This document shows positions 14,562-29,423 of a DNA stretch of 64,000 nt, piece by piece (positions within the stretch are counted from its first letter, which is position 1; every line of letters begins with the position of its first letter). The notes beneath the pieces were generated by a model, which searched no databases, was not told the origin of the DNA, and saw only the letters and a program-made list of their open reading frames with translations. A program made the position numbers and the translations under genes. The stretch lies in sequence record LR745206.1. One strand, written 5' to 3'.

Positions 14562-14802
14562 TTCTAATTTCTATTTTAAAGTGGTGTTCTATACTACCAG
14601 GGATTTTCCTATAAAGTATTTTTAATAGTTCATCATCTGATAGAGATTTTCTATCTACTTTATAGTTTATGGTTCTCTTTTTCCTTTTAGTTAGAATATT
14701 TATATGTAAAGTGTCATTAGTTAGTTTATAACTTATGATTTCTTTCGATTCTACTTTACGATTTAGAATTTCTTTTATCTTGGTTTTACTAAAAAGGTTC
14801 AT
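14527..14802 (-). CDS. basic hypothetical protein with C-terminal tag
   Basis: ends RNVKIRRLINRS. Confidence 0.6.
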   Translation of the reverse strand: MNLFSKTKIKEILNRKVESKEIISYKLTNDTLHINILTKRKKRTINYKVDRKSLSDDELLKILYRKIPGSIEHHFKIEIRNVKIRRLINRS

Positions 14803-14806
14803 TTCA

Positions 14807-14814
14807 CAAAAATA
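14807..14814 (-). promoter_or_regulatory. Bacteroidota-type -7 promoter element
   Basis: TATTTTTG just upstream of ATG 14802. Confidence 0.5.
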
Positions 14815-14888
14815 GTTATTTTTTTCCTCATAGAAAAGTTTTTGACTAAATAGTTTTAATATATATGTTATTAAATAATATAAATAAT

Positions 14889-16559: not shown

Positions 16560-18187
16560 AAGATTTAAAACACATAAAGTTATTCGAAGCATTCGAATCA
16601 TCAATTTTACCGAAAACACTTGGTTATATAAATCCATCAAGTAGAAGTACTTTTATGCAATATATCAAGAAGATATGTAATGTTATTGATTTCCCAATCT
16701 CTGAATTATCTGATGATTATCTTGAATATTTACCATTCAGTGCAGCTCTAAAAAAAGCTGATATAATAACAGATGAACCTTGTGATGCTACAAGTGGTCA
16801 AGCTTTCCCTGAATATGAAGTTAAAGGTGAGGTTTGTAATAAAGGATCATTGAAAAGAAAATGGGGAACTAGAGTTAGATCAGTAACTTGTCCTGTTTGT
16901 GGTGGTACTGGTGTTAAACCAAAAGTTGGAGAACCTAAATTAATAAAATTTTGGTTTACTAGTGAAGGTGATTATGTTGATACTACTTGTGTTGATGGTG
17001 TTATAAGACCTTCTGGTAGAGAAGGTACTACTGTTAATAGGTTATCAGAAAAAGACTCTGATTATGTTGTTGTTAAAACACTAAATCATAACGAGGTAAG
17101 AAGATTACAAACCGGTAGTTTTGTCAAGATAACACTTGGTGATAGAAATGATACAACATATGCTTATATCTTAAATAGAGGTGGAAATGTATTCGCTATA
17201 CAAAATGTAGCTGAAGGTAGTGGACCATCTCGTTATAATGGTATAGCTAGATATAGTTGGTCAATAGGTAATGGTGAGTATAGAAATGCTATATTAGTTA
17301 ATAGAGTAACTGAGGAAGATAAAACAAGTGTTCCAGATCCATATGATTGGAATACTGGATTTCAGTTTGGTCATAGAGGTATGGTAGCTAGATCAACAAA
17401 TATTGAACCAAATATAAAAAGAGCACACTTTGCTATTGTTATGGATTTTTCCAAATTGAAAAAATCTGAATATAATAAAGCGAAAGATATAAAAACTAAT
17501 AGAGTAGAAGCAAAAGAAGGAACTTTAGCATTTATGTCTGATGAATCTATCAGAAAAGCAAATGTTAATCGATATATTACTAAAATAGCTGCTGGTTTAG
17601 ATGTGAGTGATATTACTAATCTAAATAAAATAGTTAAAAGAATATTAGGGGTTAACTCAACTATCTTTAATATAAGAAGTGGTTATGCAAAGGATTATAT
17701 ATCTAACATAATTGGTTCATATATTGAGATATTTAAAGCTTCTGATGATAGAAAAAATCTTTATATTGAAGAGTTAAACTCTAATATAAAGGAGTATTTT
17801 AAAACTATGAGTGCTAGAAACTCAAATATAAACACAAATGTCTTAGAAATTAAGAAGAAATTATCAAGTAGTGGTAAAAAAGATGAATTAAAAATAATCA
17901 ATTTATTAGAAGAACTGAATAAATCATCATATGATATATTAACTGGTATTAACATTGAAACAATAGAAGATCTAGAAGTTATTTATCAAAAGTTATTAGC
18001 AATTAAAAATATAATAACAGTACGTAGATATGGTCTTGATAGACTTAGTAATGTTATGGATTATATGAATAGAAATGATGAACGTAATTCTTATCAATAT
18101 TTAACTGATCATTATTATGTTGGTGATTATAAAGAAGCAATAATATCGGGATTGGAAACAGCTAATAAAATAGTTAAAAAATTATAA
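16556..18187 (+). CDS. hypothetical protein, CTS-like N-terminus, zinc-ribbon motif
   Basis: MKDLKHIKLFEAFES; CPVCGGTG. Confidence 0.7.
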   Translation: MKDLKHIKLFEAFESSILPKTLGYINPSSRSTFMQYIKKICNVIDFPISELSDDYLEYLPFSAALKKADIITDEPCDATSGQAFPEYEVKGEVCNKGSLKRKWGTRVRSVTCPVCGGTGVKPKVGEPKLIKFWFTSEGDYVDTTCVDGVIRPSGREGTTVNRLSEKDSDYVVVKTLNHNEVRRLQTGSFVKITLGDRNDTTYAYILNRGGNVFAIQNVAEGSGPSRYNGIARYSWSIGNGEYRNAILVNRVTEEDKTSVPDPYDWNTGFQFGHRGMVARSTNIEPNIKRAHFAIVMDFSKLKKSEYNKAKDIKTNRVEAKEGTLAFMSDESIRKANVNRYITKIAAGLDVSDITNLNKIVKRILGVNSTIFNIRSGYAKDYISNIIGSYIEIFKASDDRKNLYIEELNSNIKEYFKTMSARNSNINTNVLEIKKKLSSSGKKDELKIINLLEELNKSSYDILTGINIETIEDLEVIYQKLLAIKNIITVRRYGLDRLSNVMDYMNRNDERNSYQYLTDHYYVGDYKEAIISGLETANKIVKKL

Positions 18188-18193
18188 TAGATT

Positions 18194-18673
18194 ATGAATT
18201 ATAGAGATAACACACCAACTTATAATGTAAATAGACGAGTAGTTAACTTCGGTGACTATTGTAATGACTTTGAGAAGGAAAAAGAAGACTTAAAAAAAGT
18301 TAAGAGATCAATCACACCTAACAGCGATGAGAGACAAAAGTTTCCAAAAAACTCTAGATATAAATTTAACACAATTACTAGAAAGATGGATGATTTAACA
18401 CCAGATATCATTGATGATAAATTAAAATCTATGGAGGAAGTGGATGAGTCTAAAATAAATGAATCATCTATCGATTTTGATGTTTTACATAAGATTACAC
18501 AATTACCAGGATTCAGTAAATTAAAAGAAGATTTCAGAAAGTGTATTGATGAGTTTAATACTGAGTTAAATTCTGCTGCTAGTGAAATTGGTTATGATGA
18601 GGGTGATAGTGATCACAGCTTAGCTTATAATGCTGCAATACAAGAAGCAATAGATGAAATAGTTGGGTGGTAA
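18194..18673 (+). CDS. hypothetical protein
   Basis: 159-aa ORF. Confidence 0.6.
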   Translation: MNYRDNTPTYNVNRRVVNFGDYCNDFEKEKEDLKKVKRSITPNSDERQKFPKNSRYKFNTITRKMDDLTPDIIDDKLKSMEEVDESKINESSIDFDVLHKITQLPGFSKLKEDFRKCIDEFNTELNSAASEIGYDEGDSDHSLAYNAAIQEAIDEIVGW

Positions 18674-19224
18674 TGAAGCACTTAAAAGCATTTGAAGAAT
18701 ATGAATTCCCAAAGAATAAGTGGGAAATTGTTTCATCTAATCCTGTTAAAAAGATAGAAGGTAAAACACTAATAGAATTGGTTGATACTGCATATAAATC
18801 AACACCACTTGGATCTTTTGTTAAAACAATACAAGACGTAGTTAAAAGTGATTGGTTAGTCATCGATTATAATGAAGAATCTGGTGTTGATGCTTGTATA
18901 TTTTACAGAGAGCCTAGAACTAATGAAAATTGGATAGGCAAAAAGATACAAGGTATTGGACATGATGGTGTAAAAGATTCTAAGAAATTGATTATACAAA
19001 AAATGATTGATATTCTAAATAAAGATGGATTTTGGATAGAAGCATCAGATAAGATGGAAGAGGTTCTAGAGAAAAGTTGTGATAGAGTTACTGATGTTAA
19101 TATATTAAAAAAGTTATTCCCAGAATCTAAATTTAGAATCTTAGAAAATGGTCAATATGAGAGAACAATAGAAAGTGGTGAATTTGTTAAAGAATCCGTA
19201 TTTGGAAAACCAAAATTAAAATAA
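18673..19224 (+). CDS. hypothetical protein with CTS-like N-terminus
   Basis: ATG 18673 overlaps upstream stop (TAATG); MKHLKAFEE. Confidence 0.7.
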   Translation: MKHLKAFEEYEFPKNKWEIVSSNPVKKIEGKTLIELVDTAYKSTPLGSFVKTIQDVVKSDWLVIDYNEESGVDACIFYREPRTNENWIGKKIQGIGHDGVKDSKKLIIQKMIDILNKDGFWIEASDKMEEVLEKSCDRVTDVNILKKLFPESKFRILENGQYERTIESGEFVKESVFGKPKLK

Positions 19225-19242
19225 TTTTAGTATATTTATATT

Positions 19243-19734
19243 ATGAAAGTTTTATATATTCACGGATATCAAGCAAGTCCATCAAAACAAAAGGTGGATA
19301 TTCTAAGTAAATATTTTGATAGTGTAACCGCACCACTTATTGATTGGGATGATGAAGAAGATAGAAAACATTTATTTTCGGATCTTATTAAGATAATCAA
19401 AAGAAAAGGAATAACTCATATAATAGGTAGTTCAATGGGTGGTCAAATGGCTTTCTATTTAATAACATATCTAAACAAGACCGGATTATGTTTCAATCCG
19501 TCTTTTAATGGTCGATACAAAGATTATAACTTCGAAGTTAACAGATACTTCAATAAGAAAGTTTTGATTGATCTGGGTAAACATGACAATGTTGTATCAC
19601 CACAAAAAACCATTAAATTTTTACAAGAATCTGAATTCAGTAAAAGTAATATAGTTATAAACTATATAGATAGCGGACACACAATAAACCTTAAAATCTT
19701 TGAGGATTCAATTCAAAAACTAATTAACTTATAA
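19243..19734 (+). CDS. alpha/beta hydrolase, YqiA/UPF0227-like esterase
   Basis: LYIHGY, nucleophile elbow GSSMGG, FNP, D..V, GH. Confidence 0.8.
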   Translation: MKVLYIHGYQASPSKQKVDILSKYFDSVTAPLIDWDDEEDRKHLFSDLIKIIKRKGITHIIGSSMGGQMAFYLITYLNKTGLCFNPSFNGRYKDYNFEVNRYFNKKVLIDLGKHDNVVSPQKTIKFLQESEFSKSNIVINYIDSGHTINLKIFEDSIQKLINL

Positions 19735-19752
19735 CTTATTCACTTCATAACT

Positions 19753-19762
19753 TAATATATAA
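19753..19762 (+). promoter_or_regulatory. WAATATATA motif (putative late-type promoter)
   Basis: TAATATATAA 3 nt before ATG 19766. Confidence 0.5.
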
Positions 19763-19765
19763 GAT

Positions 19766-20290
19766 ATGAAGTATTTAAAGAAATACAAAGCTTTTGAGTT
19801 AAAGTCTTCGACTTACCTATCTGCTGCTGATAAATTATCTAAAAATCATCCAGAAAGATCTAAAAAATTGAGACAATGGGTTGATAACTCTGGTGATGTT
19901 GATATTAACTATCTTGATCCAAGACCATTATACTCAAAGGATAATGTTTATTACATAACAAAGGTTTATGTTCAACCAGATGATACGTTTGGTGGTCTTG
20001 GTAATAATATAGAAGTAACATTAGAGTCTGCTAGTGATATTTACACACTCTGGATATATAATTGGTTATCGGATGGTCAACATCTTACATCAGTAACTAA
20101 TACAATAGAAACTTATGGTACTCCTTGGGCATCACCAGGATATACAAGAAAAGATGATCAACCTATTATGTCTTTTCCAGATAAATTCTATCTAGATGAT
20201 AGAAAATCAGCTAGAATATTTATGGAAATAGTTGAAAAGGAAGCTGGTGAAAAGTTATTATTCTCACTTAATGATATTTATAAAAGCTAA
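19766..20290 (+). CDS. hypothetical protein with CTS-like N-terminus
   Basis: MKYLKKYKAFEL. Confidence 0.7.
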   Translation: MKYLKKYKAFELKSSTYLSAADKLSKNHPERSKKLRQWVDNSGDVDINYLDPRPLYSKDNVYYITKVYVQPDDTFGGLGNNIEVTLESASDIYTLWIYNWLSDGQHLTSVTNTIETYGTPWASPGYTRKDDQPIMSFPDKFYLDDRKSARIFMEIVEKEAGEKLLFSLNDIYKS

Positions 20291-20778
20291 TGAAATACTT
20301 AAAAACATTTGAATCAATTGATGAACTAAGAAGGGAATCTAAGATAAAATCATATATCAGTGAAATAATGCAACCATTAAAGGATGATGGTTGGGTTACT
20401 AAAATAGAAACCAATTGGAACAAAAAGAATGCCGGGCAAGTAATAAACATAGGAACCGATATTAATAGAGATAAAGATAATATTGTGAGATTTGAATATA
20501 GGTTTAAAATAGTTCTTGGTAAAAGAGAAATGAATGAAAATGATAATAACAATCTTTTGGATTGTGTTTACCAAATGTTATCATTTTTGAATTCGGATAA
20601 CGAATATGAATTCGCATTAACACTATTCGCTTATGCTGATATTTGGTCAAAAAAAGATGGAACATCAGCAACCACATTATTAGATACCCAATTATTTATA
20701 AATAATGAGTCTGATATTAATTCAATAGAATTACCAAAGGAATCAGATATATTAGTTTGTGATTTATTTGTTAAATAA
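20290..20778 (+). CDS. hypothetical protein with CTS-like N-terminus (DIFxELxDDG family)
   Basis: MKYLKTFES; EIMQPLKDDG. Confidence 0.7.
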   Translation: MKYLKTFESIDELRRESKIKSYISEIMQPLKDDGWVTKIETNWNKKNAGQVINIGTDINRDKDNIVRFEYRFKIVLGKREMNENDNNNLLDCVYQMLSFLNSDNEYEFALTLFAYADIWSKKDGTSATTLLDTQLFINNESDINSIELPKESDILVCDLFVK

Positions 20779-20807
20779 AAAGAGAGTTGATTGTTCAACT
20801 CTCTTTT
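20778..20807. terminator. bidirectional intrinsic terminator
   Basis: AAAAGAGAGTTGA-TTGT-TCAACTCTCTTTT between convergent genes. Confidence 0.85.
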
Positions 20808-20810
20808 CTT

Positions 20811-23800
20811 TTATTTAAGTACTGTTACGTGACCTCTGACTTGTTTTCTAACATTATTGAATGTTGTTACATCTACTGTCCAGACATAAACATCATTTTT
20901 AACAATACTTCCTTTATAAGTACCATCCCAACCAACTTCCGAATTATATGATTCGAATAATATCTCACCCCATCTATCAAAGATAGTTAAGTGATATTTT
21001 TGTGGATCGTGACCAGAAACAATCGGTAAAAACACATTGTTAAATGCGTCACCGTCTGGTGTAAAAGCATTTGGTACGAATAGGAAGAACTCTTGATTTA
21101 TAACTACCATTCCATATGCAGTATCACTACAACCAAAATCATTTATAACTATAAGTTCTATTTGATAATGTCCAGTATCTTGATAAGAATGTGAATCGTG
21201 GAAATTATTTGAGATATCACCATCACCAAATGACCATTGGAATTGATTACCACCAATAGAATTATTAATGAAATTAATAGTATTATTAGTAATAGTTCCT
21301 TCATTAGGATCCCAAGTAAACTGAGCTATTGGTTCAGGATAGACTTGAAAAGCATTTGTTATAGTAGTATCCATTGTACAACCATCAAGTGATGTCATTG
21401 ATAATGTAACACTATAATACCCAGAGTTAAAATAAATATCACTGATTGATCCACAACCTGTATAATTTAATAGTGTTCCAGGTCCACTTACTATCCAATT
21501 ACATCCAGTACCAGCAGCATTGTTTGTCATTGTTATATCTAATGGCGAGCAACCATTAGGTGTAAATGTTATATCCATTGGTGGTACATTATAAATATTA
21601 ACTGTTGTGGTTATGATTGAATCACAACCGTTAGACGTTAATAAATTACTTATATACACAACATTACTATTGATATTAGTTTGAGTTGTGCCATCCGGGA
21701 ATGTAAAGTTTAGACCAGGACATTGGTTATAAGACTCTGTTAGATTATAAACAGGATTTATTGATATATTCTCAGTTACTAAGCTATCACAACCATCAAC
21801 CGATGTTAATGTACTTACATAACTTGTTGGTGCTGTAATATTAGTTTGTGAAGAACCATCAGCAAATGTATAATTATCACCACTACATATTGTTATATTT
21901 GTTGTTGATGTGTATGAAGCGAATACAGAAACATTTGTTGTTATGATTGAATCACAACCAACATTAGTTAATAAATTACTAACATGAACTGTTGGTGCAA
22001 CTATACCAGCTTGTACAAATCCATCTGGGTATGTATAAGAAGAACCACTACAAACACTAACATTTTCTACTATATTATAAACAGGATCTATTGAGACATT
22101 TGTCGTTATGATTGAATCACAACCATTTGTTGTTAATAAATTACTTACTTGTGTTACCGGAACTATAATACCAGATTGTATTGATCCATCTGGGAATGTA
22201 TAATTATCACCACTACAAACACTAACATTCTGAATAACATTATAAATAGGGTTTAATGAAACATTTGTTGTTACTATTGAATCACATCCATTTGTTGTTA
22301 ATAAATTACTTACTTGTGTTACTGGAGCCACAATACCAGATTGTATTGATCCATCTGGGAATGTATAATTATCACCTTCACATATAGTAACATTTTGAGT
22401 TATGTTATAAACAGGATTAACGGAAATATTTGTTGTTACTATTGAATCACATCCATTTGAAGCCGCTCCGGTAAGTGTACTTACTTGTGAAGTTGGTACA
22501 ATAACATTTGGATTAACACTTCCATCTGGGAATGTGTACGAATCACCACTACAAACAACAGTATTAACCACTGATGTTGGATTTGGTAATAGTGAAACAT
22601 TTGTTGTAACTATTGAATCACAACCAGCAACAGATGCACCAACAAGGGTACTTACTTGTGAAACTGGTCCACTTATAACTTGTGTTGATCCATCTGGGAA
22701 TGTAACAGTTGTTCCGTTACAAACAGATATATTCTGAGTAGATGTTACAGATGGTACAATAGAAACATTTGTTGTAATTATAGAGTCGCAACCATTTGAA
22801 GCAGCACCAACAAGTGTGCTAATTTGTGAAGTTGCTGCTACCACTACCTGACTTGATCCATCTGGAAAAACAACAGTTGTTCCACTACAAACAGATATGT
22901 TTTGTGTAGATGTTGGATTAGGTAGTAAAGTAACATTTGTTGTGATAACTGAATCACAACCATTAAATGCGCCACCAACAAGTGTACTCACTTGTGTAAC
23001 TGCACCACCTATAACTTGTGTTGATCCATCTGGGAATGTAACAGTACTACCGTTACAAGCTGATATGTTTTGTGTAGATGTTGATGGTAATGGTGTATAA
23101 TCAACATAAACTGAATCAGTTGTACTACATCCACCACCAGTAACAGTAACATAATACCAAGAACTTGTTGTTGGACAAGCCGTTTGTGTGCTATCATTAA
23201 TAGGTGTTAAAAAAGGACCTACCCAGTTCCAAACATAAACTGGTGGAGCTGTTCCGCAGTTTGCGGTTGTTGTGAATACATTTCCAGTAGCTGGATTTGG
23301 ACCACCATTGAATATAGGAATAGCAAGTGGATTATATAAAGTATAAGTATTCTCTCCTTCCCAAGAACCGGATGTATAGTTCAAGGTGAATGTTTGTCCA
23401 TCTTGAACACAAAAAGTTATTATACTACCACTACCAGCGGCAGAGAATGGTCCTAATGTTGGACCAGCAGTTACATTCACTGTTAATGAACCACCATTCC
23501 AACCATCACCGAATGAATCCTGCATATCTAATGTATAACAACAAGAATCAGGTGGTATAGATGAAAGACCAGCATCTAATTGTGTACAACCACCACAAGT
23601 AGTTATTGTTGGTGGGGTAGCTGTAACATTAACAATAGGGAATAAAACATTAACTGTTACACTTGAGTAACAGGTATCATTTATACCATTTGTATATAAT
23701 ACATTGTATGTTGTAGTTGATGTTGGACAAACTGTTCCACCTGATGCTGGATTTGGGGATCCTGGTAAATGCGACCAATCATAATAATATCCACAATCAT

Positions 23801-24428
23801 TTGCTAAAATAGTAACATTATCAATACCCCAGTGATCATTAAGATTACTTGACGTAGCTGTTTGACTCCATTGAAACATAGTACTTGGTGACCAAGCACC
23901 AGGCGGTAAAGTAAAACAATAATTATTCCAAGTTGTCATAATAGGATCAAATCCTGTTCCTGGATTGAAATAGTTTATTGTTATCCAAGTCACACCACCA
24001 TTAATTGAATATTGAAAGTAAATACCTTCTGTTGGTAAATCCGGACCCTCACAAGGAGAAGCACCGCCTTGTTGAGCCATTCTAAAATCAAAACAAACTT
24101 GACCACCACAACTCATATCGAATGCGTTTGTGGTTAATATTCTCGGTGCTGGTGAAGCTGAACCCATCCACATATAAGTACCACCTGGTCCCGGACCACA
24201 TGGGTTAGTATATGTTGCTGCTGTAGTTGAAGACCAACCAGGTCCAGCAACTCCAGTATTAAAATCATTATTCATAACAAGTGTGCCTTGAATACCAATA
24301 GCATTCAAATCAGCACATTGACCACAAACAACTTGATTCACTGATGCTGTTGTGGTTACTGAGCATTGTGATATCACATTTGATGTGAATCCAAGTAATG
24401 TAATAAATAGAAATATTAGTTTTTTCAT
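20811..24428 (-). CDS. T9SS type-B sorting domain (gliding motility-associated CTD) surface protein with reelin-like, tandem-repeat and PKD domains
   Basis: Sec signal MKKLIFLFITLLGF; QYSINGGVTW/DHWGIDNV; PKD motifs AQFTWDP and QWSFGDG; C-terminal VPNAFTPDGD..NNVF...IFDRWG...WDGTYKG. Confidence 0.9.
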   Translation of the reverse strand: MKKLIFLFITLLGFTSNVISQCSVTTTASVNQVVCGQCADLNAIGIQGTLVMNNDFNTGVAGPGWSSTTAATYTNPCGPGPGGTYMWMGSASPAPRILTTNAFDMSCGGQVCFDFRMAQQGGASPCEGPDLPTEGIYFQYSINGGVTWITINYFNPGTGFDPIMTTWNNYCFTLPPGAWSPSTMFQWSQTATSSNLNDHWGIDNVTILANDCGYYYDWSHLPGSPNPASGGTVCPTSTTTYNVLYTNGINDTCYSSVTVNVLFPIVNVTATPPTITTCGGCTQLDAGLSSIPPDSCCYTLDMQDSFGDGWNGGSLTVNVTAGPTLGPFSAAGSGSIITFCVQDGQTFTLNYTSGSWEGENTYTLYNPLAIPIFNGGPNPATGNVFTTTANCGTAPPVYVWNWVGPFLTPINDSTQTACPTTSSWYYVTVTGGGCSTTDSVYVDYTPLPSTSTQNISACNGSTVTFPDGSTQVIGGAVTQVSTLVGGAFNGCDSVITTNVTLLPNPTSTQNISVCSGTTVVFPDGSSQVVVAATSQISTLVGAASNGCDSIITTNVSIVPSVTSTQNISVCNGTTVTFPDGSTQVISGPVSQVSTLVGASVAGCDSIVTTNVSLLPNPTSVVNTVVCSGDSYTFPDGSVNPNVIVPTSQVSTLTGAASNGCDSIVTTNISVNPVYNITQNVTICEGDNYTFPDGSIQSGIVAPVTQVSNLLTTNGCDSIVTTNVSLNPIYNVIQNVSVCSGDNYTFPDGSIQSGIIVPVTQVSNLLTTNGCDSIITTNVSIDPVYNIVENVSVCSGSSYTYPDGFVQAGIVAPTVHVSNLLTNVGCDSIITTNVSVFASYTSTTNITICSGDNYTFADGSSQTNITAPTSYVSTLTSVDGCDSLVTENISINPVYNLTESYNQCPGLNFTFPDGTTQTNINSNVVYISNLLTSNGCDSIITTTVNIYNVPPMDITFTPNGCSPLDITMTNNAAGTGCNWIVSGPGTLLNYTGCGSISDIYFNSGYYSVTLSMTSLDGCTMDTTITNAFQVYPEPIAQFTWDPNEGTITNNTINFINNSIGGNQFQWSFGDGDISNNFHDSHSYQDTGHYQIELIVINDFGCSDTAYGMVVINQEFFLFVPNAFTPDGDAFNNVFLPIVSGHDPQKYHLTIFDRWGEILFESYNSEVGWDGTYKGSIVKNDVYVWTVDVTTFNNVRKQVRGHVTVLK
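21590..23085 (-). repeat. nine tandem ~55-57-aa repeats (CxGxxxTFPDGS...GCDSIxTTN)
   Basis: nine units read directly in the translation; boundaries approximate. Confidence 0.85.
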
Positions 24429-24429
24429 C

Positions 24430-24825
24430 TTAGTTTAGGTTTATTTGTATAGTAAATCCATTTATTTTAGTTTCTGATAAAATAATACCAGATCCATTAG
24501 GTAAGAACCTATGGAACAAACTCAATTGTTGATTAGCAACACCAGTTATGGATTCACCTGGGTTTATTGTTAAAGTTGGTTGTGATTCAGTGTCATAAAC
24601 TTGACCATTTATGATAATTTTATAAGAGAATTCTATAATAGAATTGGTTGTATTTGTAAATTTGAATATATGAAATTCTTGATGAACATCATATTGGTTG
24701 TCATGATATTCTTGTAAGCTTTGCTCAATAAGTATACCACTTTGTGTATCTATTTGTTTCCAATTTTGTGAAAAGGAAAATAATGTTGTTAACATAAACA
24801 ACATCAATAATTTTAGTTTCTTCAT
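24430..24825 (-). CDS. secreted hypothetical protein
   Basis: ATG 24825 gives signal peptide MKKLKLLMLFMLTTLFSFSQ, with Gln after the predicted cleavage site as is common in Bacteroidota. Confidence 0.7.
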   Translation of the reverse strand: MKKLKLLMLFMLTTLFSFSQNWKQIDTQSGILIEQSLQEYHDNQYDVHQEFHIFKFTNTTNSIIEFSYKIIINGQVYDTESQPTLTINPGESITGVANQQLSLFHRFLPNGSGIILSETKINGFTIQINLN

Positions 24826-24866
24826 TTTTAGTTTTAGATTTATAATTTGATTAACATATATATAGT

Positions 24867-25169
24867 TTATATAATACCGATTTTTTGCAATTTTTCGTCT
24901 CTTTCCCATTGTTTTTCAGTTACAAACCAACCTACCCAAGACTCCGAGACACCAACTTGACCAAACCACCAATTAAGATTTAAATCATCTTTTATACAAA
25001 TATCATCTTCAAATCCATCTCTAGTATGCACGATTTCATATCGTTTACCGTAAGTTAGATCTTCCATATCTTCCAATATACAGACAAGAATATTACCTTT
25101 TTTAAGTCTCACTATTATACATTTTAAAGACGAGTATGGATTTAAATGGTTGTTAGATACCCAAATCAT
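24867..25169 (-). CDS. hypothetical protein with C-terminal tag
   Basis: ends RDEKLQKIGII; true start uncertain. Confidence 0.65.
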   Translation of the reverse strand: MIWVSNNHLNPYSSLKCIIVRLKKGNILVCILEDMEDLTYGKRYEIVHTRDGFEDDICIKDDLNLNWWFGQVGVSESWVGWFVTEKQWERDEKLQKIGII

Positions 25170-25449
25170 TTATTTTTTTACCTCTGGATTCTCTGATATA
25201 CCAATCATAAACAACTTGGTAATAATCATCATGATCAAAATAAACATAACTTGTGCCACTAGATTTATTATCAATAAATAAATGTTCTCCTGTTATTAAT
25301 AAGCATTTAACATAGTTGGTTGGATTACCTCTTGGTACATCCTTTACCTCCAAATGCGTTATTAGTGTGTAAGTTTGATCATTAAATGAATTTTCCTTTA
25401 TTAGATTAATTAGGTAATCACTTTCTAACTTTGATATTTCTATTCTCAT
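25153..25449 (-). CDS. hypothetical protein with C-terminal tag
   Basis: ends RGKKINDLGI. Confidence 0.65.
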   Translation of the reverse strand: MRIEISKLESDYLINLIKENSFNDQTYTLITHLEVKDVPRGNPTNYVKCLLITGEHLFIDNKSSGTSYVYFDHDDYYQVVYDWYIRESRGKKINDLGI

Positions 25450-25769
25450 ATACCAATTAAATTTAATTTAATCTCTCTAAGAATTGGTATTAATAATTTT
25501 TTTAGATTCTCCTCTGACATTTTGAAATGTTCATGTTTATATAATTCGTTTATGTTGTAAATCTCATAACGATTATCACCTAAAAAACTATGCTCAACTT
25601 TTATGGAAAATTCAACCTTACCAATCATACCAGTCTTGTGTATAATTGGTATATAACATACAAAAAAATTATCGGAAGAATACTCACTACTTATATGTAG
25701 TGGTGTATCTGATGATTTACCATCAAGGTATAATCCAACTATAATATCCCAAAGATATTTATTAGTCAT
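25446..25769 (-). CDS. hypothetical protein with C-terminal tag
   Basis: ends REIKLNLIGI. Confidence 0.65.
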   Translation of the reverse strand: MTNKYLWDIIVGLYLDGKSSDTPLHISSEYSSDNFFVCYIPIIHKTGMIGKVEFSIKVEHSFLGDNRYEIYNINELYKHEHFKMSEENLKKLLIPILREIKLNLIGI

Positions 25770-25983
25770 TTTTTAATTTAACTATTTCCCTTTTTAGAGA
25801 AAAGATTTGAGAATTCTTTTGATTTTTATATTCATTCATTAATGAATCAACATTTAGCTTACCACTATGAAATTTTCTATTACGATAGTCTAGATCATAC
25901 CAATAACTAGAAATATTTCTTTTGATATTTCTAATCTTTCTAACTATTGATAGTATTTTATAAAATGTAATCATCTTCTTCAT
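25762..25983 (-). CDS. basic hypothetical protein
   Basis: 73-aa ORF overlapping next start. Confidence 0.5.
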   Translation of the reverse strand: MKKMITFYKILSIVRKIRNIKRNISSYWYDLDYRNRKFHSGKLNVDSLMNEYKNQKNSQIFSLKREIVKLKND

Positions 25984-26121
25984 TAATAAAGTATATATAT
26001 TTTTTTCATCTTGGTTTTGATATTGTTTATCGAAAGTTATATTAATTTTTTGTTATTAATTTACCCTTGTGAAAAACATATAATACAAATTTACTATAAT
26101 TAATATAATTATACAAATAAA

Positions 26122-26556
26122 ATGAAAGATAAAGATGTTTACTTTAATGTAATGAAAAATTACAAAACGATGTTATCAAACCTAACAGCAGATATCGTTG
26201 CTTATGATAATTGGTCAGATGAATTTTCAAGAAGTGAGATAAATAAACTTTATAAACTTTTAATTAAGGAGTTTGATGATATTGACTTCACACAATTTAC
26301 ACCAGAAGAATTAAAAACATTTGATTTTAGGTACTGGGATGAAGATTTGTTATGTATACCACCATGGGCTATAGATTGTCTACCAGATGGTATTATACTA
26401 TCATCCATTGATGGGAAAGAGTTTGTATTTAAGAAACCAATTGAAAAGAATTCGATGAAGGATAGTAGAGGTGGAGTAACCGCTTATGGATTTACAAAAG
26501 CTATGTTAAGAGATAATAAATTAAATTCTATATTAGAAGATGGGCAAAAGGATTAG
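26122..26556 (+). CDS. hypothetical protein with C-terminal tag
   Basis: RDNKLNSILED near C-terminus. Confidence 0.7.
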   Translation: MKDKDVYFNVMKNYKTMLSNLTADIVAYDNWSDEFSRSEINKLYKLLIKEFDDIDFTQFTPEELKTFDFRYWDEDLLCIPPWAIDCLPDGIILSSIDGKEFVFKKPIEKNSMKDSRGGVTAYGFTKAMLRDNKLNSILEDGQKD

Positions 26557-26767
26557 CTTACAAGAAATGGAAAATAATATTGTATTTAATGATCAACACC
26601 AAGTAATTTATAAAGGTGTTAATCTTGGTATAACTAGAGAAAGTATAACAGATTATCAGATACAAACAGGATTTGATCCAGTTGAATGGGTTGACCATTT
26701 ATATAACAATTCACTATTGGTTATCCGCGATAAGAAAATAAGTAAGATACTTGATGAACTCACTTGA
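26540..26767 (+). CDS. hypothetical protein with C-terminal tag
   Basis: RDKKISKILDE. Confidence 0.65.
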   Translation: MGKRISLQEMENNIVFNDQHQVIYKGVNLGITRESITDYQIQTGFDPVEWVDHLYNNSLLVIRDKKISKILDELT

Positions 26768-26987
26768 GATAGAAGAGATGTTTGATAATAAATTTTTGAT
26801 TGAATCATACTCGCTTAAAAATGGTGGCGTATTAAATGTGATGATACATAATACATTAGACAACACATTACATTACATCACACATGAAATAGTGGGTGGT
26901 GATTGTACTAGCTTGGTAGTGGCATTTATCGAAAGTATAATAAGAGATAGGAGGACCAATTCAATAAATAAGTTAATAGATGGATGA
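26751..26987 (+). CDS. hypothetical protein with tag variant
   Basis: ends RDRRTNSINKLIDG. Confidence 0.6.
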   Translation: MMNSLEIEEMFDNKFLIESYSLKNGGVLNVMIHNTLDNTLHYITHEIVGGDCTSLVVAFIESIIRDRRTNSINKLIDG

Positions 26988-27195
26988 TATTAGGTTACGT
27001 AAAATTGGAACAGAAAAGGTAAAAGTATTTGAGAAATGCTTTGATAAAGTTTATGATTACTACAAACAAAAAGCAGAAGATTCTGGTTATTGGGGTGAAC
27101 TCAAATTCATAAAAGAAAAAGGTAAAATAATAGTTTATACTGTTATTGAATTACCTCCTTTAGATGATGATGATTTAATTATCCGTGTTTCTTAA
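26980..27195 (+). CDS. hypothetical protein
   Basis: 71-aa ORF. Confidence 0.55.
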   Translation: MDDIRLRKIGTEKVKVFEKCFDKVYDYYKQKAEDSGYWGELKFIKEKGKIIVYTVIELPPLDDDDLIIRVS

Positions 27196-27660
27196 TCTTT
27201 TCCTCATTTCCATATAGTCAATTGGTATTCTCCAATTTAACCCAACATGAGAACATTCTTTATTAGATAGATTTTCTAATTTATCTAAGGTCGTAAACAA
27301 TGTATTATCTTTATGCTTACCACCACCAATACTTATTTTTGTTGTGAATATTGGTTGTATTAAATATGAATATCTTTTTAGGTAATCATCAGCTCTAAAT
27401 ATAACATCACTTATATCACCTAATTTAAATGTTGGTAAATAAAAACTTTCAACATCTCGATCACCAACAATACCATTTATCTCAATATTAATACTATCAC
27501 CAATTACTTTACCCATCCTTTTTGATTCAACAACAACTTCTATATCCTCATCACGAATCTCATTGAATATATCATTTAGATCATTGATGATTATTATTTC
27601 TTCCTCTTTTGTTATGGGAGAAGAACTTTCGAATAATTTATACTTTTTCAGGTATTTCAT
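27175..27660 (-). CDS. CTS-like N-terminus, DIFxELxDDG family
   Basis: MKYLKKYKLFES; LNDIFNEIRDED. Confidence 0.75.
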   Translation of the reverse strand: MKYLKKYKLFESSSPITKEEEIIIINDLNDIFNEIRDEDIEVVVESKRMGKVIGDSINIEINGIVGDRDVESFYLPTFKLGDISDVIFRADDYLKRYSYLIQPIFTTKISIGGGKHKDNTLFTTLDKLENLSNKECSHVGLNWRIPIDYMEMRKRLRNTDN

Positions 27661-28609
27661 TTATAAATACTATTTCTATTTCTCTTATAACTGGTCTAAC
27701 ATCAGTTTCTATATCTTTCTCATCTATTGATATTTCTAAATCATCAAATTGCATTTCTGATTTGAATTTATATTCACCATCTTGCTTCCCAACATATGAA
27801 AATTCTTCTAACCACTCATTCATACCATATTCCAATATTTGGAATTCTACTTCATGTAAAGTTGTATCTTCTAATCCTTGTTTTATACTAAAATCATCTA
27901 GTGTTTTGAATTTTCTATTAAATGTATGGTGTGTACCATTAACCAAAGATAATCGAAGTGTAACACTTTCCAATTTATAATTGATTATATCAGTTATTTG
28001 TTTTATTCTATAATCAATATCCTCAATCATAATACTATTTTGTCCTTTTCTATAAAGTGATATTTGTATAGTATCTGTTTTTAATCCTGCTGAGGGCATA
28101 CTTCGTTTAACGCTAGATACTACATGATATCCATATCCCAAATCCTCCATATCATACATCATCGATTCAACATGGTCTCTATCATCACTAAGAGATTCAT
28201 TAACACCATACCTAGATTTATAGTAGTTTGGACCTCTATAATCTGTTATTTTAATGTTTATATTCCAAACATCTTCACCCATAAACATTTGCATATCATT
28301 GCCGGATAATTGATATTCTCTTGTACCACTCATAATAACATTGAACGTACAGAAAGACCAACCAAGTCTAGCAGAGTATTCGGCAATTCTTGCTGTAGCG
28401 TCTGATATTTCTTGTGTTATTTTAAATTTATTGGTGAATCTTCCTTGTTCATCCATTGTAACATCAGCAAATATTCTTTCATTCTTTTCATCAGGTAAAA
28501 ACCGAACAAATAATCCCAAATCTTCTATCTCAAGTATAATATCTTTTAGACCTTGTGATAACTCTTCGAAATTATTTTCAAATAACTTATATGTTTTTAA
28601 ATATATCAT
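27638..28609 (-). CDS. CTS-like N-terminus, two DIFxELxDDG-family domains
   Basis: MIYLKTYKLFEN; LKDIILEIEDLG and VESMMYDMEDLG. Confidence 0.75.
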   Translation of the reverse strand: MIYLKTYKLFENNFEELSQGLKDIILEIEDLGLFVRFLPDEKNERIFADVTMDEQGRFTNKFKITQEISDATARIAEYSARLGWSFCTFNVIMSGTREYQLSGNDMQMFMGEDVWNINIKITDYRGPNYYKSRYGVNESLSDDRDHVESMMYDMEDLGYGYHVVSSVKRSMPSAGLKTDTIQISLYRKGQNSIMIEDIDYRIKQITDIINYKLESVTLRLSLVNGTHHTFNRKFKTLDDFSIKQGLEDTTLHEVEFQILEYGMNEWLEEFSYVGKQDGEYKFKSEMQFDDLEISIDEKDIETDVRPVIREIEIVFINEIPEKV

Positions 28610-29061
28610 ATGTCAATTTTAACCATTATATCGAAAGATAATTGACTTTCATAATCAACGTTCATTATAACCTCAGTACTAATAAATTCTAAATCCTTTA
28701 TTGTTTCATTTATCTGTAAAAGTTCTAACATAACTTTAGAACCTCTTTCTTGGTCAGTGGATTTAACAAAGACTGGGGCTGAAAAATTACCTCTACCAAC
28801 ACTTATACCTGGTATATTCGAATGTATGATAACAAATGCACCATCTCCTTCGCCACCAAGTGATGCTTTTTCTTTCATCCTTTCGAATAATAAACTTAAT
28901 GCTTCTTTATCATCCGCAGATGCTTTCAAATTTGATACTTCTTCTAACCTAGAACCAATAAAAATACCTAGTGTATATTGAACAACAACTCCAGAATCTT
29001 CCAGTTCTAAAAATAAATCTCTTATTTTAAGAAATTTACGTTGAATTTTATTAAAATTTAT
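28606..29061 (-). pseudogene. 5'-truncated DIFxELxDDG-family gene
   Basis: frame of ORF 28606-28929 stays open up to 29061 and includes IRDLFLELEDSG; in-frame TAA at 29062-29064; family N-terminus missing. Confidence 0.55.
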
Positions 29062-29082
29062 TTAGTTCATTATCAAGTATTT

Positions 29083-29114
29083 AAGTCGAGAATATAGTTT
29101 TCTCGACTTTTTTT
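29083..29114 (+). terminator. intrinsic terminator-like hairpin
   Basis: AAGTCGAGAA-TATAGTT-TTCTCGACTT followed by T-tract. Confidence 0.6.
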
Positions 29115-29118
29115 ATGT

Positions 29119-29230
29119 AAAAAATAAAAGGTCTAACCTAAGCTAGACCCTTTAGTGATCGCCTTCTACAGTCAACTTAAAGGATAAGTTCTGCGGCAAT
29201 AGACTCGCGAAAACGCTTAGTCAAATCACA
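29119..29230 (-). ncRNA. unclassified structured RNA candidate (3-way junction plus terminator)
   Basis: P1 GTGATT/GATCAC; P2 GACT..GCG-TTTT-CGC..AGTC; P3 GCC.GCAG.AACTTA/TAAGTT.CTGT.GGC; then GGTCTAG/TTAGACC and U-tract; G-U pairs favour the minus strand. Confidence 0.45.
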
Positions 29231-29380
29231 TTTGATAAAATTAATTAAAATTATTTAATGAAAACATTTTTTTGTATTACTTTTTTTACTAATTTTACGA
29301 AATAATTTATAAGAGCCAACTTATAATGAAGATTTTTAAATAGCAAATTACTACTTTCATATATAATAATTTGATCCCTT

Positions 29381-29421
29381 AAAAACCCTGAATTGTCGGT
29401 TGGCTCCGGTTCAGGGTTTTT
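29381..29421 (+). promoter_or_regulatory. hairpin immediately upstream of HTH/Rep-like gene
   Basis: AAAAACCCTGAA...TTCAGGGTTTTT 12-bp stem ending 2 nt before ATG 29424. Confidence 0.5.
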
Positions 29422-29423
29422 TT

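What the first reader, a model, noticed from the sequence alone, without database searches (positions are those of the whole stretch)
20811..24825. Phage-context T9SS cargo adhesin plus a second secreted protein
Seen: a 1205-aa protein with Sec signal, reelin-like domain, nine Cys-paired ~56-aa repeats, PKD and a type-B (gliding-motility-associated) C-terminal sorting domain. It is co-oriented with a 131-aa signal-peptide protein, and both are embedded among resident tag-bearing genes with an intact terminator. Established: type-B CTDs direct export by the Bacteroidota T9SS and generally need a PorP/SprF-like partner; none is recognisable in the window. Inference: the virus displays a surface protein through the host T9SS, possibly for superinfection exclusion, aggregation, or jamming of gliding/secretion.
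Basis: partly seen in the sequence, partly recalled or inferred. Interest (0 to 1): 0.65.

Follow-up and report, generated by a model that had tools for sequence, protein, structure and literature searches.

The report
Megaphage-borne T9SS surface adhesin cassette
A 635-kb phage of Bacteroidota carries, under purifying selection, a two-gene cassette that is also common in bacteria (a small secreted protein plus a large adhesin-like protein with a type IX secretion tag), so the phage probably re-dresses its host's surface during infection.

Summary
Window 20811-24428(-) encodes a 1205-aa protein. It has a Sec signal peptide, a reelin-subrepeat-B-like head (Z about 21), nine two-Cys repeats of about 56 aa, a PKD domain and a type B T9SS sorting domain above the curated cut-off. 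A 131-aa signal-peptide gene sits 1 nt upstream, and a hairpin terminator follows.

The window is LR745206.1, a curated 634,780-bp megaphage with a predicted Bacteroidetes host. The gene is not contamination. Its GC3 matches the phage, its dN/dS is 0.12, and the same gene pair occurs in at least six other phage-like contigs, including marine megaphage Mar_Mega_1.

New here:
- The pair is a widespread bacterial cassette: the small gene lies directly upstream of a reelin-head gene in 53 of 77 Bacteroidota loci.
- No PorP/SprF is encoded anywhere in the phage, and a bacterial homologue checked genome-wide has none nearby ("orphan" cargo).
- The phage carries three more type B and one or two type A cargo genes.

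Export through the host T9SS onto a host shuttle is the likely mechanism, but it is untested. The proposed purposes (exclusion, jamming) are speculation. Phage T9SS cargo with type A tags was already reported. I rate this a new variant of a known kind, of moderate interest.

The parts
20811..24428 (-). Gene for the 1205-aa T9SS type B cargo, an adhesin-like surface protein (P0001)
   Evidence: Orthologues are 61-92% identical in phage contigs. dN/dS against L002 is 0.12.
24369..24428 (-). Sec signal peptide, aa 1-20, with cleavage predicted at VIS|Q (Bacteroidetes Q-rule)
   Evidence: Sequence is. S20, Q21 and C22 are invariant in orthologues. The Q-rule is described in PMC5837995. No predictor was run.
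23799..24284 (-). Reelin-subrepeat-B-like jelly-roll head, aa 49-210
   Evidence: Pfam PF21471 matches at 6e-17. The AF2 model aligns to reelin repeats with Z 19.7-21.3, to the Kgp K1 adhesin domain with Z 14.4, and to MAM domains and CBMs with Z 11-12.
23079..23798 (-). Three predicted all-beta modules, aa 211-450, including a DSFGDGWNG-motif domain (about 296-392); no family assigned
   Evidence: Secondary structure comes from the model. Pfam finds nothing here. There is no PDB sequence match. The region is conserved in phage orthologues.
21585..23078 (-). Stalk of nine repeats of 55-57 aa, each with two Cys (C-x32-C) and the motifs TFPDG and GCDS
   Evidence: Positions are and TRF periods of 165 and 168 nt. 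The alignment shows one repeat fewer in P0003 and extra repeats in P0004. NCBIfam motif_MiiA scores 27.7 bits against a cut-off of 24.
21084..21584 (-). PKD-type Ig region, aa 949-1115
   Evidence: PKD_4 matches at aa 1033-1103 (4e-9) and PKD at 1061-1105.
20814..21080 (-). Type B T9SS C-terminal sorting domain, aa 1117-1205
   Evidence: CHU_C matches at 1e-11. TIGR04131 scores 51.4 bits against a cut-off of 35, covering model positions 3-83 of 85. Alignment with bacterial CTDs shows the shared blocks PNAFTPDGD, IFxRWGE, GWDGTY and GHVTVLK.
24430..24825 (-). Gene for a 131-aa Sec-exported beta-sandwich protein, the conserved upstream partner; no known family
   Evidence: Sequence is. Orthologues lie directly upstream of the adhesin in all phage contigs examined and in 53 of 77 bacterial loci. 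The AF2 model has pLDDT 87.9. Fold matches are unspecific, with best Z 6.5. There is no Pfam family. dN/dS is 0.16.
20778..20807 (.). Bidirectional intrinsic-terminator hairpin between the convergent genes
   Evidence: The scan finds 13 pairs, a 4-nt loop and a T-tail. The hairpin is conserved in L002.
24867..25983 (-). Four small co-oriented ORFs (100, 98, 107 and 73 aa) with overlapping or abutting ends, heading the same gene run; all are ORFans
   Evidence: ORFs are. Pfam finds nothing in the three that were scanned; the 73-aa ORF was not scanned. They are syntenic and 91-94% identical in L002, with a similar layout in L007.
25990..26006 (-). AAAAAATATATATAC motif 11 nt before the first ORF of the run; a candidate phage promoter or 'tag'
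   Evidence: The motif is enriched upstream of genes. Function was not tested.
24857..24863 (-). Variant TATATATA motif 31 nt before the small gene's ATG
   Evidence: Seen. It is conserved in L002, and a similar AATATATAAC lies before the small gene of Mar_Mega_1.

Best explanation
The locus is a phage-resident, functional copy of a two-gene cassette that is widespread in Bacteroidota. The first gene encodes a small Sec-exported beta-sandwich protein. The second encodes a large modular surface protein with a reelin-B/CBM-like binding head, beta modules, a stalk of nine two-cysteine repeats, a PKD domain and a type B T9SS sorting domain.

Proposed mechanism:
1. During infection the megaphage transcribes the pair, either as the tail of a six-gene run or from its own AT-rich motif.
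2. Both products cross the inner membrane through the host Sec system. Their signal peptides follow the Bacteroidetes Q-rule.
3. The host T9SS translocon recognises the large protein by its CTD.
4. The phage encodes no PorP/SprF. The protein is therefore handed to a host 'orphan' PorP/SprF-type shuttle, as orphan type B substrates are in F. johnsoniae. The shuttle holds it on the cell surface with the binding head outermost.
5. The small protein acts with it, as a periplasmic chaperone or mask, or as a co-factor.

The net effect is that the phage adds to, or keeps up, an adhesin on the surface of the infected cell. This resembles an auxiliary host-function gene. It is one item in a wider set of envelope genes: the same genome has three more type B and one or two type A cargo genes.

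Shown: the gene structure, the domain identities, phage residence, conservation, purifying selection, the bacterial distribution of the cassette, and the absence of PorP/SprF from the phage.

Inferred: expression, Sec/T9SS export, use of a host shuttle, surface anchoring, ligand binding, the role of the small protein, and any benefit to the phage.
For: Identity of the window. It is 100% identical to LR745206.1. That genome was manually curated and circularised, belongs to the Mahaphage clade, and has a predicted Bacteroidetes host (PMC7162821).

Domains.

Not host DNA.
- GC3 is 0.138, against 0.12-0.24 for phage neighbours. The raised overall GC comes from GC2 of 0.49.
- Flanking genes are syntenic and 90-95% identical in L002.
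- Contigs about 90-92% identical, from another metagenome run, bridge both junctions.

Functional. dN/dS is 0.12 for the adhesin and 0.16 for the small gene.

Conserved pair in other phage contexts.
- Mar_Mega_1: adhesin 61-66% and small protein 41% identical, with different flanks.
- Contigs L004-L007 carry a tail tube protein, homing endonucleases and a NinI-like phosphatase.

Bacterial origin.
- Three Crocinitomicaceae-type loci carry the same pair; hhalign gives 94% probability for the small protein of one of them.
- 455 bacterial loci hold relatives of the head.
- The small gene lies directly upstream in 53 of 77 evaluable loci.

Orphan status is normal.
- The phage has no PorP/SprF.
- Crocinitomicaceae genomes have 30-42 type B CTDs but only 12-18 PorP/SprF. 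In genome G001 no PorP/SprF lies near the reelin-head gene.
- Orphan substrates share the shuttle Fjoh_1677 (PMC12618676).
- Type B cargo is anchored through PorP-like proteins (PMC9143113).

Repertoire. LR745206 has four type B and two or three type A CTD hits. Sister phage LR756502 has three type B CTD ORFs and no PorP/SprF.

Signal peptides. All five secreted phage proteins inspected have Gln at +1.
Against: - There is no expression or secretion evidence of any kind. The host is unknown.
- CTD-shuttle pairing is specific: five motifs are necessary but not sufficient (PMC12618676). A compatible host shuttle is therefore assumed, not shown.
- The closest complete relative, LR756502, lacks this cassette, so it is dispensable for the clade.
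- The small protein's fold is a generic beta-sandwich with no informative match, so its role is a guess.
- The complex prediction could not be run.
- No ligand is known for the head. A shared fold does not prove adhesin function.
- dS of the adhesin (0.40-0.46) is about twice that of the flanks (0.14-0.22). This could reflect recombination rather than simple vertical descent.
Confidence: 0.65

Rival explanations
1. Superinfection exclusion or sabotage of the secretion and gliding machinery. The phage cargo floods host PorP/SprF shuttles or covers a T9SS-dependent receptor. Other phages, or progeny, then cannot adsorb, or gliding stops.
For: - Cargo without a shuttle must compete for host shuttles.
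- Several orphan type B cargo genes occur per megaphage.
- The literature search returned papers that tie phage resistance in Flavobacterium to mutations in gliding-motility genes (title of PMC9804748; not read in detail).
- Al-Shayeb et al. suggest that phage-encoded surface proteins may alter susceptibility to other phages.
Against: - Nothing in the sequence points to blocking rather than binding.
- The same cassette is an ordinary chromosomal gene pair in hundreds of Bacteroidota loci, where it cannot be an anti-phage jammer of self.
- The binding head is as strongly conserved as the CTD (73% against 63% identity versus Mar_Mega_1). A mere shuttle-clogging decoy would need only the CTD.
Confidence: 0.15
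2. Host contamination or chimeric assembly: the adhesin region is bacterial DNA wrongly joined into the phage genome.
For: GC is 0.35 in the gene, against about 0.28 around it. Homologues are abundant in bacteria.
Against: - GC3 of 0.138 equals the phage background.
- The gene sits 1 nt from the small gene, and the pair lies in a run of phage ORFans.
- The same junctions appear in L002 and in contigs of another run.
- The pair is present in long-read-assembled Mar_Mega_1.
- The best bacterial identity for the head is only 34-55%.
- The genome was manually curated.
Confidence: 0.02
3. A released binding protein rather than an anchored one. After T9SS export the protein is shed, free or on vesicles. 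It then acts at a distance, for example by agglutinating neighbouring cells or particles or by binding a polymer.
For: - T9SS cargo can be either anchored or released (abstract of PMC10202324).
- The head resembles CBMs and the haemagglutinating Kgp K1 domain.
- No anchor partner is encoded in cis.
Against: Type B cargo studied so far stays bound to PorP-like proteins on the surface (PMC9143113). A long repeat stalk fits a cell-anchored protein that projects its head outwards.
Confidence: 0.12
4. A neutral passenger ('moron'): recently captured host genes carried without any function in infection.
For: Distribution among megaphages is patchy; LR756502 lacks the cassette. Bacterial homologues are common.
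Against: - dN/dS is 0.12-0.16 between two phage copies, and 0.15-0.30 against Mar_Mega_1.
- Codon usage is fully that of the phage.
- The pair is retained in phages that share only about 14-17% of their genes (PMC9723777).
- The signal peptide and CTD are intact in all copies.
Confidence: 0.05

Closest known systems
'Cryophage' T9SS cargo genes (Bellas et al. 2020, Nat Commun, PMC7468147)
   Same: These are phage-encoded proteins with a T9SS sorting domain, presumed to hijack the host system to place proteins on or outside the infected cell. [quoted passage not shown]
   Different: The Cryophage proteins carry type A CTDs (PorV shuttle, A-LPS anchoring) on enzymes and a PA14 protein, and they vary between phage variants. 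The protein here has a type B CTD (PorP/SprF shuttle), is adhesin-like, comes with a conserved small partner gene, and is conserved under purifying selection across megaphages.
Orphan type B substrates of Flavobacterium johnsoniae (Fjoh_1123, Fjoh_1720, Fjoh_4934) with the orphan shuttle Fjoh_1677 (Paillat et al. 2025, PMC12618676)
   Same: They are type B CTD proteins with no adjacent PorP/SprF gene, served by a shuttle encoded elsewhere. The phage protein must likewise rely on a shuttle encoded elsewhere, here in the host genome.
   Different: In that system both cargo and shuttle lie in one genome. Here the cargo is viral. No homology beyond the CTD was tested. Whether a host shuttle accepts this CTD is unknown.
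Bacterial reelin-head type B CTD cassettes, for example in Crocinitomicaceae MAGs (P0030 with P0124; loci L016-L018)
   Same: The two-gene order is the same (small secreted protein, then reelin-head protein). The large proteins share the head (43% identity), the Cys repeats (39%), the PKD domain and the CTD (56%). One checked genome-wide has no PorP/SprF nearby.
   Different: They are chromosomal. The small protein is 158-164 aa and only remotely similar (22-31% identity). The middle modules differ: a P-domain-like or Ig_7 module replaces the GDGW-motif module. These cassettes are themselves uncharacterised.
SprB/SprF gliding adhesin system and the PG1035-PorP-PorE complex (Gorasia et al. 2022, PMC9143113)
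   Same: These are type B CTD surface proteins held on the cell by a PorP-like outer-membrane protein.
   Different: P0001 has no SprB repeats and no adjacent sprF or porP. There is no evidence that it rides the gliding track.
Reelin subrepeat B, and the 'cleaved adhesin' K1 domain of P. gingivalis Lys-gingipain
   Same: The head shares the jelly-roll fold: Z about 21 with reelin and Z 14.4 with Kgp K1, which is itself part of a T9SS-exported adhesin/protease.
   Different: Sequence identity is 16-24% only. The EGF module and subrepeat A of true reelin repeats were not detected. No ligand can be inferred.

Membership tests
T9SS type B cargo (TIGR04131 / PF13585 CHU_C proteins) | A type B sorting domain at the extreme C-terminus that scores above the curated cut-off | tested here: met
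   TIGR04131 scores 51.4 bits against a cut-off of 35, at aa 1118-1203 of 1205. CHU_C scores 45.2 bits against 27. A six-frame search of the record gives 55.9 bits.
T9SS type B cargo (TIGR04131 / PF13585 CHU_C proteins) | [quoted passage not shown] | tested here: met
   By inspection only: MKK, then a 13-residue hydrophobic core, then VIS|Q. It is conserved in orthologues and conforms to the Q-rule (PMC5837995). No SignalP-type predictor was available.
T9SS type B cargo (TIGR04131 / PF13585 CHU_C proteins) | A cognate PorP/SprF-like shuttle, often encoded next to the cargo gene | tested here: not met
   Neither PF11751 nor TIGR03519 matches anywhere in the 634,780-bp record at E<=1. The positive control gave 12-18 hits in each Crocinitomicaceae genome. 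This feature is not strictly defining: orphan substrates use a distant shuttle. The phage protein would need a host shuttle.
T9SS type B cargo (TIGR04131 / PF13585 CHU_C proteins) | Secretion that depends on T9SS core components (SprA/Sov, GldKLMN) | not testable with these tools
   This needs expression in a T9SS-proficient host and in mutants. The host of this phage is unknown beyond the phylum prediction.
Phage-encoded T9SS cargo (Cryophage type) | Encoded in a bona fide phage genome | tested here: met
   The window is identical to LR745206.1, a curated complete huge-phage genome. Related contigs carry a tail tube protein and homing endonucleases. Codon usage and synteny agree.
Phage-encoded T9SS cargo (Cryophage type) | A type A (Por_Secre_tail) sorting domain | tested here: not met
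   P0001 has type B only. The same genome does hold a 199-aa ORF with a clear type A CTD, a 136-aa ORF near threshold (over the TIGR04183 cut-off but under Pfam's), and a weak third hit elsewhere.
SprB-like gliding motility adhesins | SprB repeats (PF13573) and an adjacent sprF | tested here: not met
   P0001 has no PF13573 match, and the genome has no PorP/SprF. A different phage protein, P0123, has one SprB-repeat match just under the cut-off.
Reelin repeat (eukaryotic) | The subrepeat A - EGF - subrepeat B arrangement | tested here: not met
   Only a subrepeat-B-like domain is present (PF21471; Z about 21). No EGF or subrepeat A was detected. It is a structural relative, not a reelin repeat.
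Reelin-head + small-partner cassette of Bacteroidota (defined here) | A small Sec-exported beta-sandwich gene directly upstream, on the same strand, of a reelin-head CHU_C gene | tested here: met
   The gap is 1 nt in the window. The same arrangement is found in the six other phage-context loci examined (L002-L007) and in 53 of 77 bacterial loci.

The most novel reading that the evidence does not exclude
The small beta-sandwich protein may be an unrecognised, dedicated accessory factor for one subclass of 'orphan' type B T9SS substrates, the reelin-head family. It could be a periplasmic chaperone or mask for the binding head, or an adaptor that directs the cargo to a shared PorP/SprF shuttle. 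On this reading, megaphages carry cargo and factor together so that export of their adhesin does not depend on host transcription. The cassette would then reveal a new component class of type IX secretion, with a virus exploiting it.
Probability: 0.25. Interest if true: 0.7.

Novelty: new variant of a known kind. Interest (0 to 1): 0.5.

Why it matters
Phage-encoded T9SS cargo has been reported once, with type A tags. Three things are added here.

- Megaphages of Bacteroidota repeatedly carry type B cargo. Type B uses a different shuttle and anchoring route. None of the phage genomes searched carries a shuttle, so these proteins must plug into host PorP/SprF proteins. That is a concrete, testable case of a virus using the specificity layer of the T9SS.
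- The phage copy drew attention to a gene pair that is very common in Flavobacteriales, Chitinophagales and Sphingobacteriales but uncharacterised: a small secreted protein followed by a reelin-head adhesin. I found no Pfam family for the small protein.
- Adhesion controls particle attachment and grazing in aquatic Bacteroidota. Viral control of surface adhesins could therefore matter ecologically.

The finding rests on sequence inference only, and its purpose is unknown.

Tried and rejected
There is therefore no binding test.
- The IMG/VR scan with the adhesin alignment found no relative. The scan with the small-protein alignment was impossible because no conserved stretch was available.
- The ESM Atlas returned only 'hypothetical protein' clusters for a bacterial homologue of the small protein.
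- Fold searches of the small protein gave only generic beta-sandwich matches: best Z 6.5, and Foldseek E>=3e-3. I draw no function from them.
- Pfam scans of all 22 small-protein homologues found nothing consistent.
- The small-protein HMM gave a weak hit to a 136-aa phage ORF. The match is signal-peptide similarity only, and I rejected it.
- PHROG and Pfam scans of the neighbours were almost all blank, apart from UPF0227, Dam methyltransferase, AAA, SPFH and a PheRS-alpha-like protein. The local context gives no functional clue.
- A flanking protein of L004 has no match in LR745206. That contig is a different phage lineage.
- A PDB sequence search with the GDGW-motif module found nothing.
- The head-domain tree (quick method) puts the phage copies near the centre, apart from the bacterial copies. 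One phage subgroup is sister to a Crocinitomicaceae-rich clade. I do not name a donor from it: the tree is unrooted, has long branches and used a quick search.
- Read mapping from the source sample was not possible. Only one public run holds related sequence (9% of sampled words), and only as contigs.
- Paper searches for huge phages with type IX secretion, and for reelin with T9SS, found nothing.
- The large representative-protein search was not used, because the family scans and the word search settled identity.

Full report
**1. What the window is**

Window 14000-30000 is 100% identical to LR745206.1 positions 572000-588000. The window therefore corresponds to 558001-622000 of a 634,780-bp record named 'uncultured phage'. 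The record has no annotation.

Al-Shayeb et al. 2020 (PMC7162821) list a 634-kb genome among four complete, manually curated, circularised genomes. They state that the largest genomes belong to the Mahaphage clade and are predicted to replicate in Bacteroidetes. PMC9723777 places LR745206 next to LR756502 and the marine megaphage Mar_Mega_1. It also reports that the three share only about 125 core genes.

The window is AT-rich (GC 0.27-0.32) and consists mostly of ORFans. Recognisable genes include a Dam-type methyltransferase, an AAA ATPase, an SPFH protein and a PheRS-alpha-like protein. No tRNA gene is present.

**2.

*The large ORF.* Window 20811-24428(-) encodes 1205 aa.

| Feature | Position (aa) | Evidence |
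|---|---|---|
| Reelin_subrepeat-B (Pfam) | 77-207 | 6e-17 |
| PKD_4 (Pfam) | 1033-1103 | 4e-9 |
| CHU_C (Pfam) | 1117-1202 | 1e-11 |
| Type B sorting domain TIGR04131 | 1118-1203 | 51.4 bits, cut-off 35 |

*The repeats.* Nine repeats of 55-57 aa each hold two cysteines. GCDS motifs lie at aa 490 to 934 and the partner Cys at 458 to 903. The DNA periods are 165 and 168 nt.

*The signal peptides.* The N-terminus MKKLIFLFITLLGFTSNVIS|QCS is a typical Sec signal peptide with Gln at +1. This is the Bacteroidetes Q-rule (PMC5837995). I judged it by eye because no predictor was available. The second gene is best read from the ATG at 24825, giving 131 aa that begin MKKLKLLMLFMLTTLFSFS|QNW. Its stop codon is 1 nt from the adhesin start.

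*The terminator.* A 13-bp hairpin at 20778-20807, flanked by an A-run and a T-run, separates the adhesin gene from the convergent plus-strand genes.

Of its 26 occurrences in the window, 16 lie within 80 nt upstream of genes. One copy heads the six-gene minus-strand run at about 25990-26006, and a variant precedes the small gene.

**3. Structure of the two proteins**

*The head.* An AF2 model of aa 1-460 has mean pLDDT 77.7 and is all-beta.

| Structural match to aa 49-210 | Z | Detail |
|---|---|---|
| Reelin subrepeat B | 19.7-21.3 | rmsd 1.8-2.2 A over 147-155 residues |
| 'Cleaved adhesin' K1 domain of P. gingivalis Lys-gingipain | 14.4 | |
| MAM domains and many carbohydrate-binding modules | 11-12 | |

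These values come, and Foldseek agrees. The head is therefore a jelly-roll binding module. No ligand can be inferred from the fold alone.

*The middle region.* Residues 211-450 form further beta modules, one with a DSFGDGWNG motif. They have no Pfam or PDB sequence match.

*The small protein.* It models confidently (pLDDT 87.9) as a beta-sandwich of about 110 residues behind its signal peptide. Structural matches are generic, with best Z 6.5. No Pfam family fits any of 22 homologues.

**4. The genes belong to the phage**

- Third-position GC of the adhesin gene is 0.138, within the 0.12-0.24 range of neighbouring phage genes. The higher overall GC (0.35) comes from second positions (0.49), because the protein is rich in Thr, Ser, Gly and Pro.
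- The closest homologue, P0003, is 90% identical over the alignment. It lies on a 95.5-kb scaffold (L002) with the same small gene, the same four upstream ORFans and the same downstream genes and terminator. Five of the six compared flanking genes are 91-95% identical.
- Contigs of one public metagenome run, about 90-92% identical, bridge the downstream gene, terminator and adhesin 3' end (20184-21972). They also bridge the adhesin 5' part, the small gene and the upstream ORFs (22990-25499). They break only inside the repeat array. That run may be the sample behind L002, but it is independent of the window's assembly.
- Between the window and L002, dN/dS is 0.12 for the adhesin and 0.16 for the small gene. 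Both genes are under purifying selection.

**5. The pair is conserved in other phages**

Mar_Mega_1 (OU342829.1, 656,628 bp) encodes a 1423-aa orthologue, P0004, annotated 'putative signaling protein'. The head is 73% identical and the PKD+CTD region 63%. A 132-aa orthologue of the small protein (41% identical) lies directly upstream, in an otherwise different neighbourhood with its own terminator.

Four further contigs (L004-L007) from other samples show the same pair.
- L004 and L005 carry a tail tube protein (phrog_4542, 4e-12) about 6 kb away.
- L006 carries homing endonucleases and a NinI-like phosphatase.

In the alignment P0003 lacks one repeat and P0004 carries several extra ones, while the head and CTD stay aligned.

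The closest complete relative, LR756502, lacks this cassette. Its distribution among megaphages is therefore patchy.

**6. The pair is a common bacterial cassette**

*Three bacterial examples.*
- In a Crocinitomicaceae MAG, the 1456-aa protein P0030 shares the head (43% identity), repeats (39%), PKD domain and CTD. A 160-aa secreted protein lies directly upstream and matches the small-protein profile (hhalign probability 94%, E 9e-8).
- Two further bacterial small-protein homologues lie upstream of reelin-head proteins: a 943-aa protein with CHU_C, and a 957-aa ORF cut by the contig end. Both sit in a uppS-bamA-skp-murI neighbourhood.

*The wider scan.* A scan of species-representative genomes found 455 loci that encode relatives of the head. 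The best 80 are all Bacteroidota. They are mainly Flavobacteriales (Crocinitomicaceae such as Fluviicola and Brumimicrobium, and Weeksellaceae), plus Chitinophagales and Sphingobacteriales. Head identity is 34-55%.

An HMM of the small protein finds a homologue directly upstream, on the same strand, in 53 of 77 evaluable loci.

*The tree.* In a quick tree of the heads, the phage-context copies sit apart from the bacterial ones, near the centre. One phage subgroup is sister to a Crocinitomicaceae-rich clade. I do not infer a donor from this tree.

**7. The missing PorP/SprF**

Neither PF11751 nor TIGR03519 matches anywhere in the 634,780-bp record. The search works: three Crocinitomicaceae genomes give 12-18 PorP/SprF matches each.

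Those same genomes hold 30-42 type B CTDs each, so many cargo proteins must share shuttles. In genome G001 no PorP/SprF hit lies near the reelin-head gene. No adjacent PorP/SprF is annotated in three other bacterial loci either.

This matches published work.
- Three orphan type B substrates of F. johnsoniae use the orphan shuttle Fjoh_1677 (PMC12618676).
- Type B cargo is held on the surface by PorP-like proteins (PMC9143113).
- Five CTD motifs are needed for secretion but do not alone set shuttle specificity. Compatibility of the phage CTD with a host shuttle is therefore plausible but unproven.

The phage CTD is 56% identical to that of P0030. It shares the blocks PNAFTPDGD, IFxRWGE, GWDGTY and GHVTVLK.

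**8. A wider repertoire**

The same phage genome holds three further type B CTD ORFs.
- P0122 (832 aa): glycine-rich domain, Ig_7, two PKD domains and CHU_C.
- P0123 (732 aa): a SprB-repeat match just under the cut-off, PKD_6 and CHU_C.
- A 126-aa ORF consisting of little more than a CHU_C domain.

It also holds a 199-aa ORF with a clear type A CTD, a 136-aa ORF near threshold, and a weak third hit. The CTD of P0122 is 68% identical to that of the Crocinitomicaceae protein P0030.

LR756502 has three type B CTD ORFs and no PorP/SprF. tblastn with P0001 and P0122 finds only these two genomes, plus one 4-kb fragment, among 50,697 phage records. All five secreted phage proteins that I inspected have Gln at +1. 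A similar pattern was noted for P. gingivalis phages (PMC10367356).

**9. Interpretation**

The best reading is an auxiliary, host-derived surface-protein cassette. The steps would be:
1. Both products cross the inner membrane through the host Sec system.
2. The host T9SS recognises the large protein by its type B CTD.
3. A host orphan PorP/SprF-type shuttle takes it up and holds it on the infected cell.
4. The reelin/CBM-like head is projected outwards on a cysteine-repeat stalk.
5. The small protein assists, in the periplasm or at the surface.

Everything after 'the genes are intact, conserved and selected' is inference.

The strong conservation of the head argues against a pure shuttle-clogging decoy.

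The rivals of contamination, neutral passenger and virion component are weak. A virion component is implausible because a Sec- and T9SS-exported protein would not be available for cytoplasmic virion assembly; that point rests on general knowledge, not on a test here.

**10. Novelty**

Bellas et al. 2020 reported phage-encoded T9SS cargo with type A tags as a unique case. Al-Shayeb et al. remarked in general terms on phage-encoded surface proteins. Their main text does not mention secretion, and the first 200 of their 257 supplementary files contain no mention of the T9SS.

New here are:
- type B cargo in megaphages, without shuttles;
- the conserved small partner;
- the recognition of the underlying bacterial cassette.

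I rate this a new variant of a known kind, with interest about 0.5.

**11. Limits**

- No expression, secretion or binding data exist for these genes.
- The host is unknown.
- The complex prediction could not be run.
- Source-sample reads were not available.
- The reads call used 6,000 letters.

Noticed in passing
window, e.g. 390(+), 9324(+), 38218(-), 42079(-), 51534(+), 57750(+), 59397(-), 25998(-): The motif (A)AATATATAC lies 5-30 nt before many start codons. Of the 26 AATATATA occurrences in the window, 16 are within 80 nt upstream of genes. It may be a phage-specific promoter or a leader element for very short 5' UTRs.
   Followed up: partly
LR745206.1 record 15115-17613(-) (L008:3116-5614) and 25768-27966(+) (L009:1269-3467): Two further large type B T9SS cargo genes lie in the same phage. 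P0122 has an ALK/LTK-like glycine-rich domain, Ig_7 and two PKD domains. P0123 has a SprB-repeat match just under the cut-off and PKD_6. Both have Q-rule signal peptides. The CTD of P0122 is 68% identical to that of a Crocinitomicaceae protein.
   Followed up: partly
LR745206.1 record about 498837-499217 (L010:2838-3218), about 298054-298653 (L011:2055-2654) and about 397332-397742 (L012:1833-2243): Three very small ORFs (126, 199 and 136 aa) consist of little more than a signal peptide and a T9SS sorting domain (type B, type A, and near-threshold type A). LR756502 has a similar 121-aa type B mini-ORF. 'CTD-only' proteins could be competitors or decoys for the secretion machinery.
   Followed up: no
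window 20811-24428 compared with its flanks (against L002): Synonymous divergence of the adhesin gene (dS 0.40-0.46) and of the small gene (0.34) is about twice that of the flanking ORFs (0.14-0.22). This hints at recombination or exchange of the cassette between related phages.
   Followed up: no
window 19766-20290(+) against L002:13955-14491: This flanking ORF is only 60% identical between the window and L002, while its neighbours are 91-95% identical. It is a local hot spot of divergence or replacement.
   Followed up: no
L016/L017/L018 (Crocinitomicaceae-type contigs): In these bacteria the small-gene and reelin-head pair sits directly after uppS, bamA, three skp/ompH genes and murI. This is a conserved outer-membrane biogenesis neighbourhood.
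   Followed up: no
window 55818-56897(-), 59452-60912(-), 7953-8810(+), 19243-19734(+): These are the recognisable genes in an otherwise ORFan window: a PheRS-alpha-like class II tRNA synthetase core, an SPFH/Band 7 protein, a Dam-type N6-adenine methyltransferase and a UPF0227/alpha-beta hydrolase.
   Followed up: no
window 418-4893(+) and 34352-38206(-): Two very large ORFs (1491 and 1284 aa) have no Pfam or PHROG match at all.
   Followed up: no
L002:14874-16442: In the close relative, a 522-aa protein with a proprotein-convertase P-domain lies 1.4 kb downstream of the adhesin gene. A P-domain-like segment also replaces the GDGW module in the bacterial homologue P0030.
   Followed up: no
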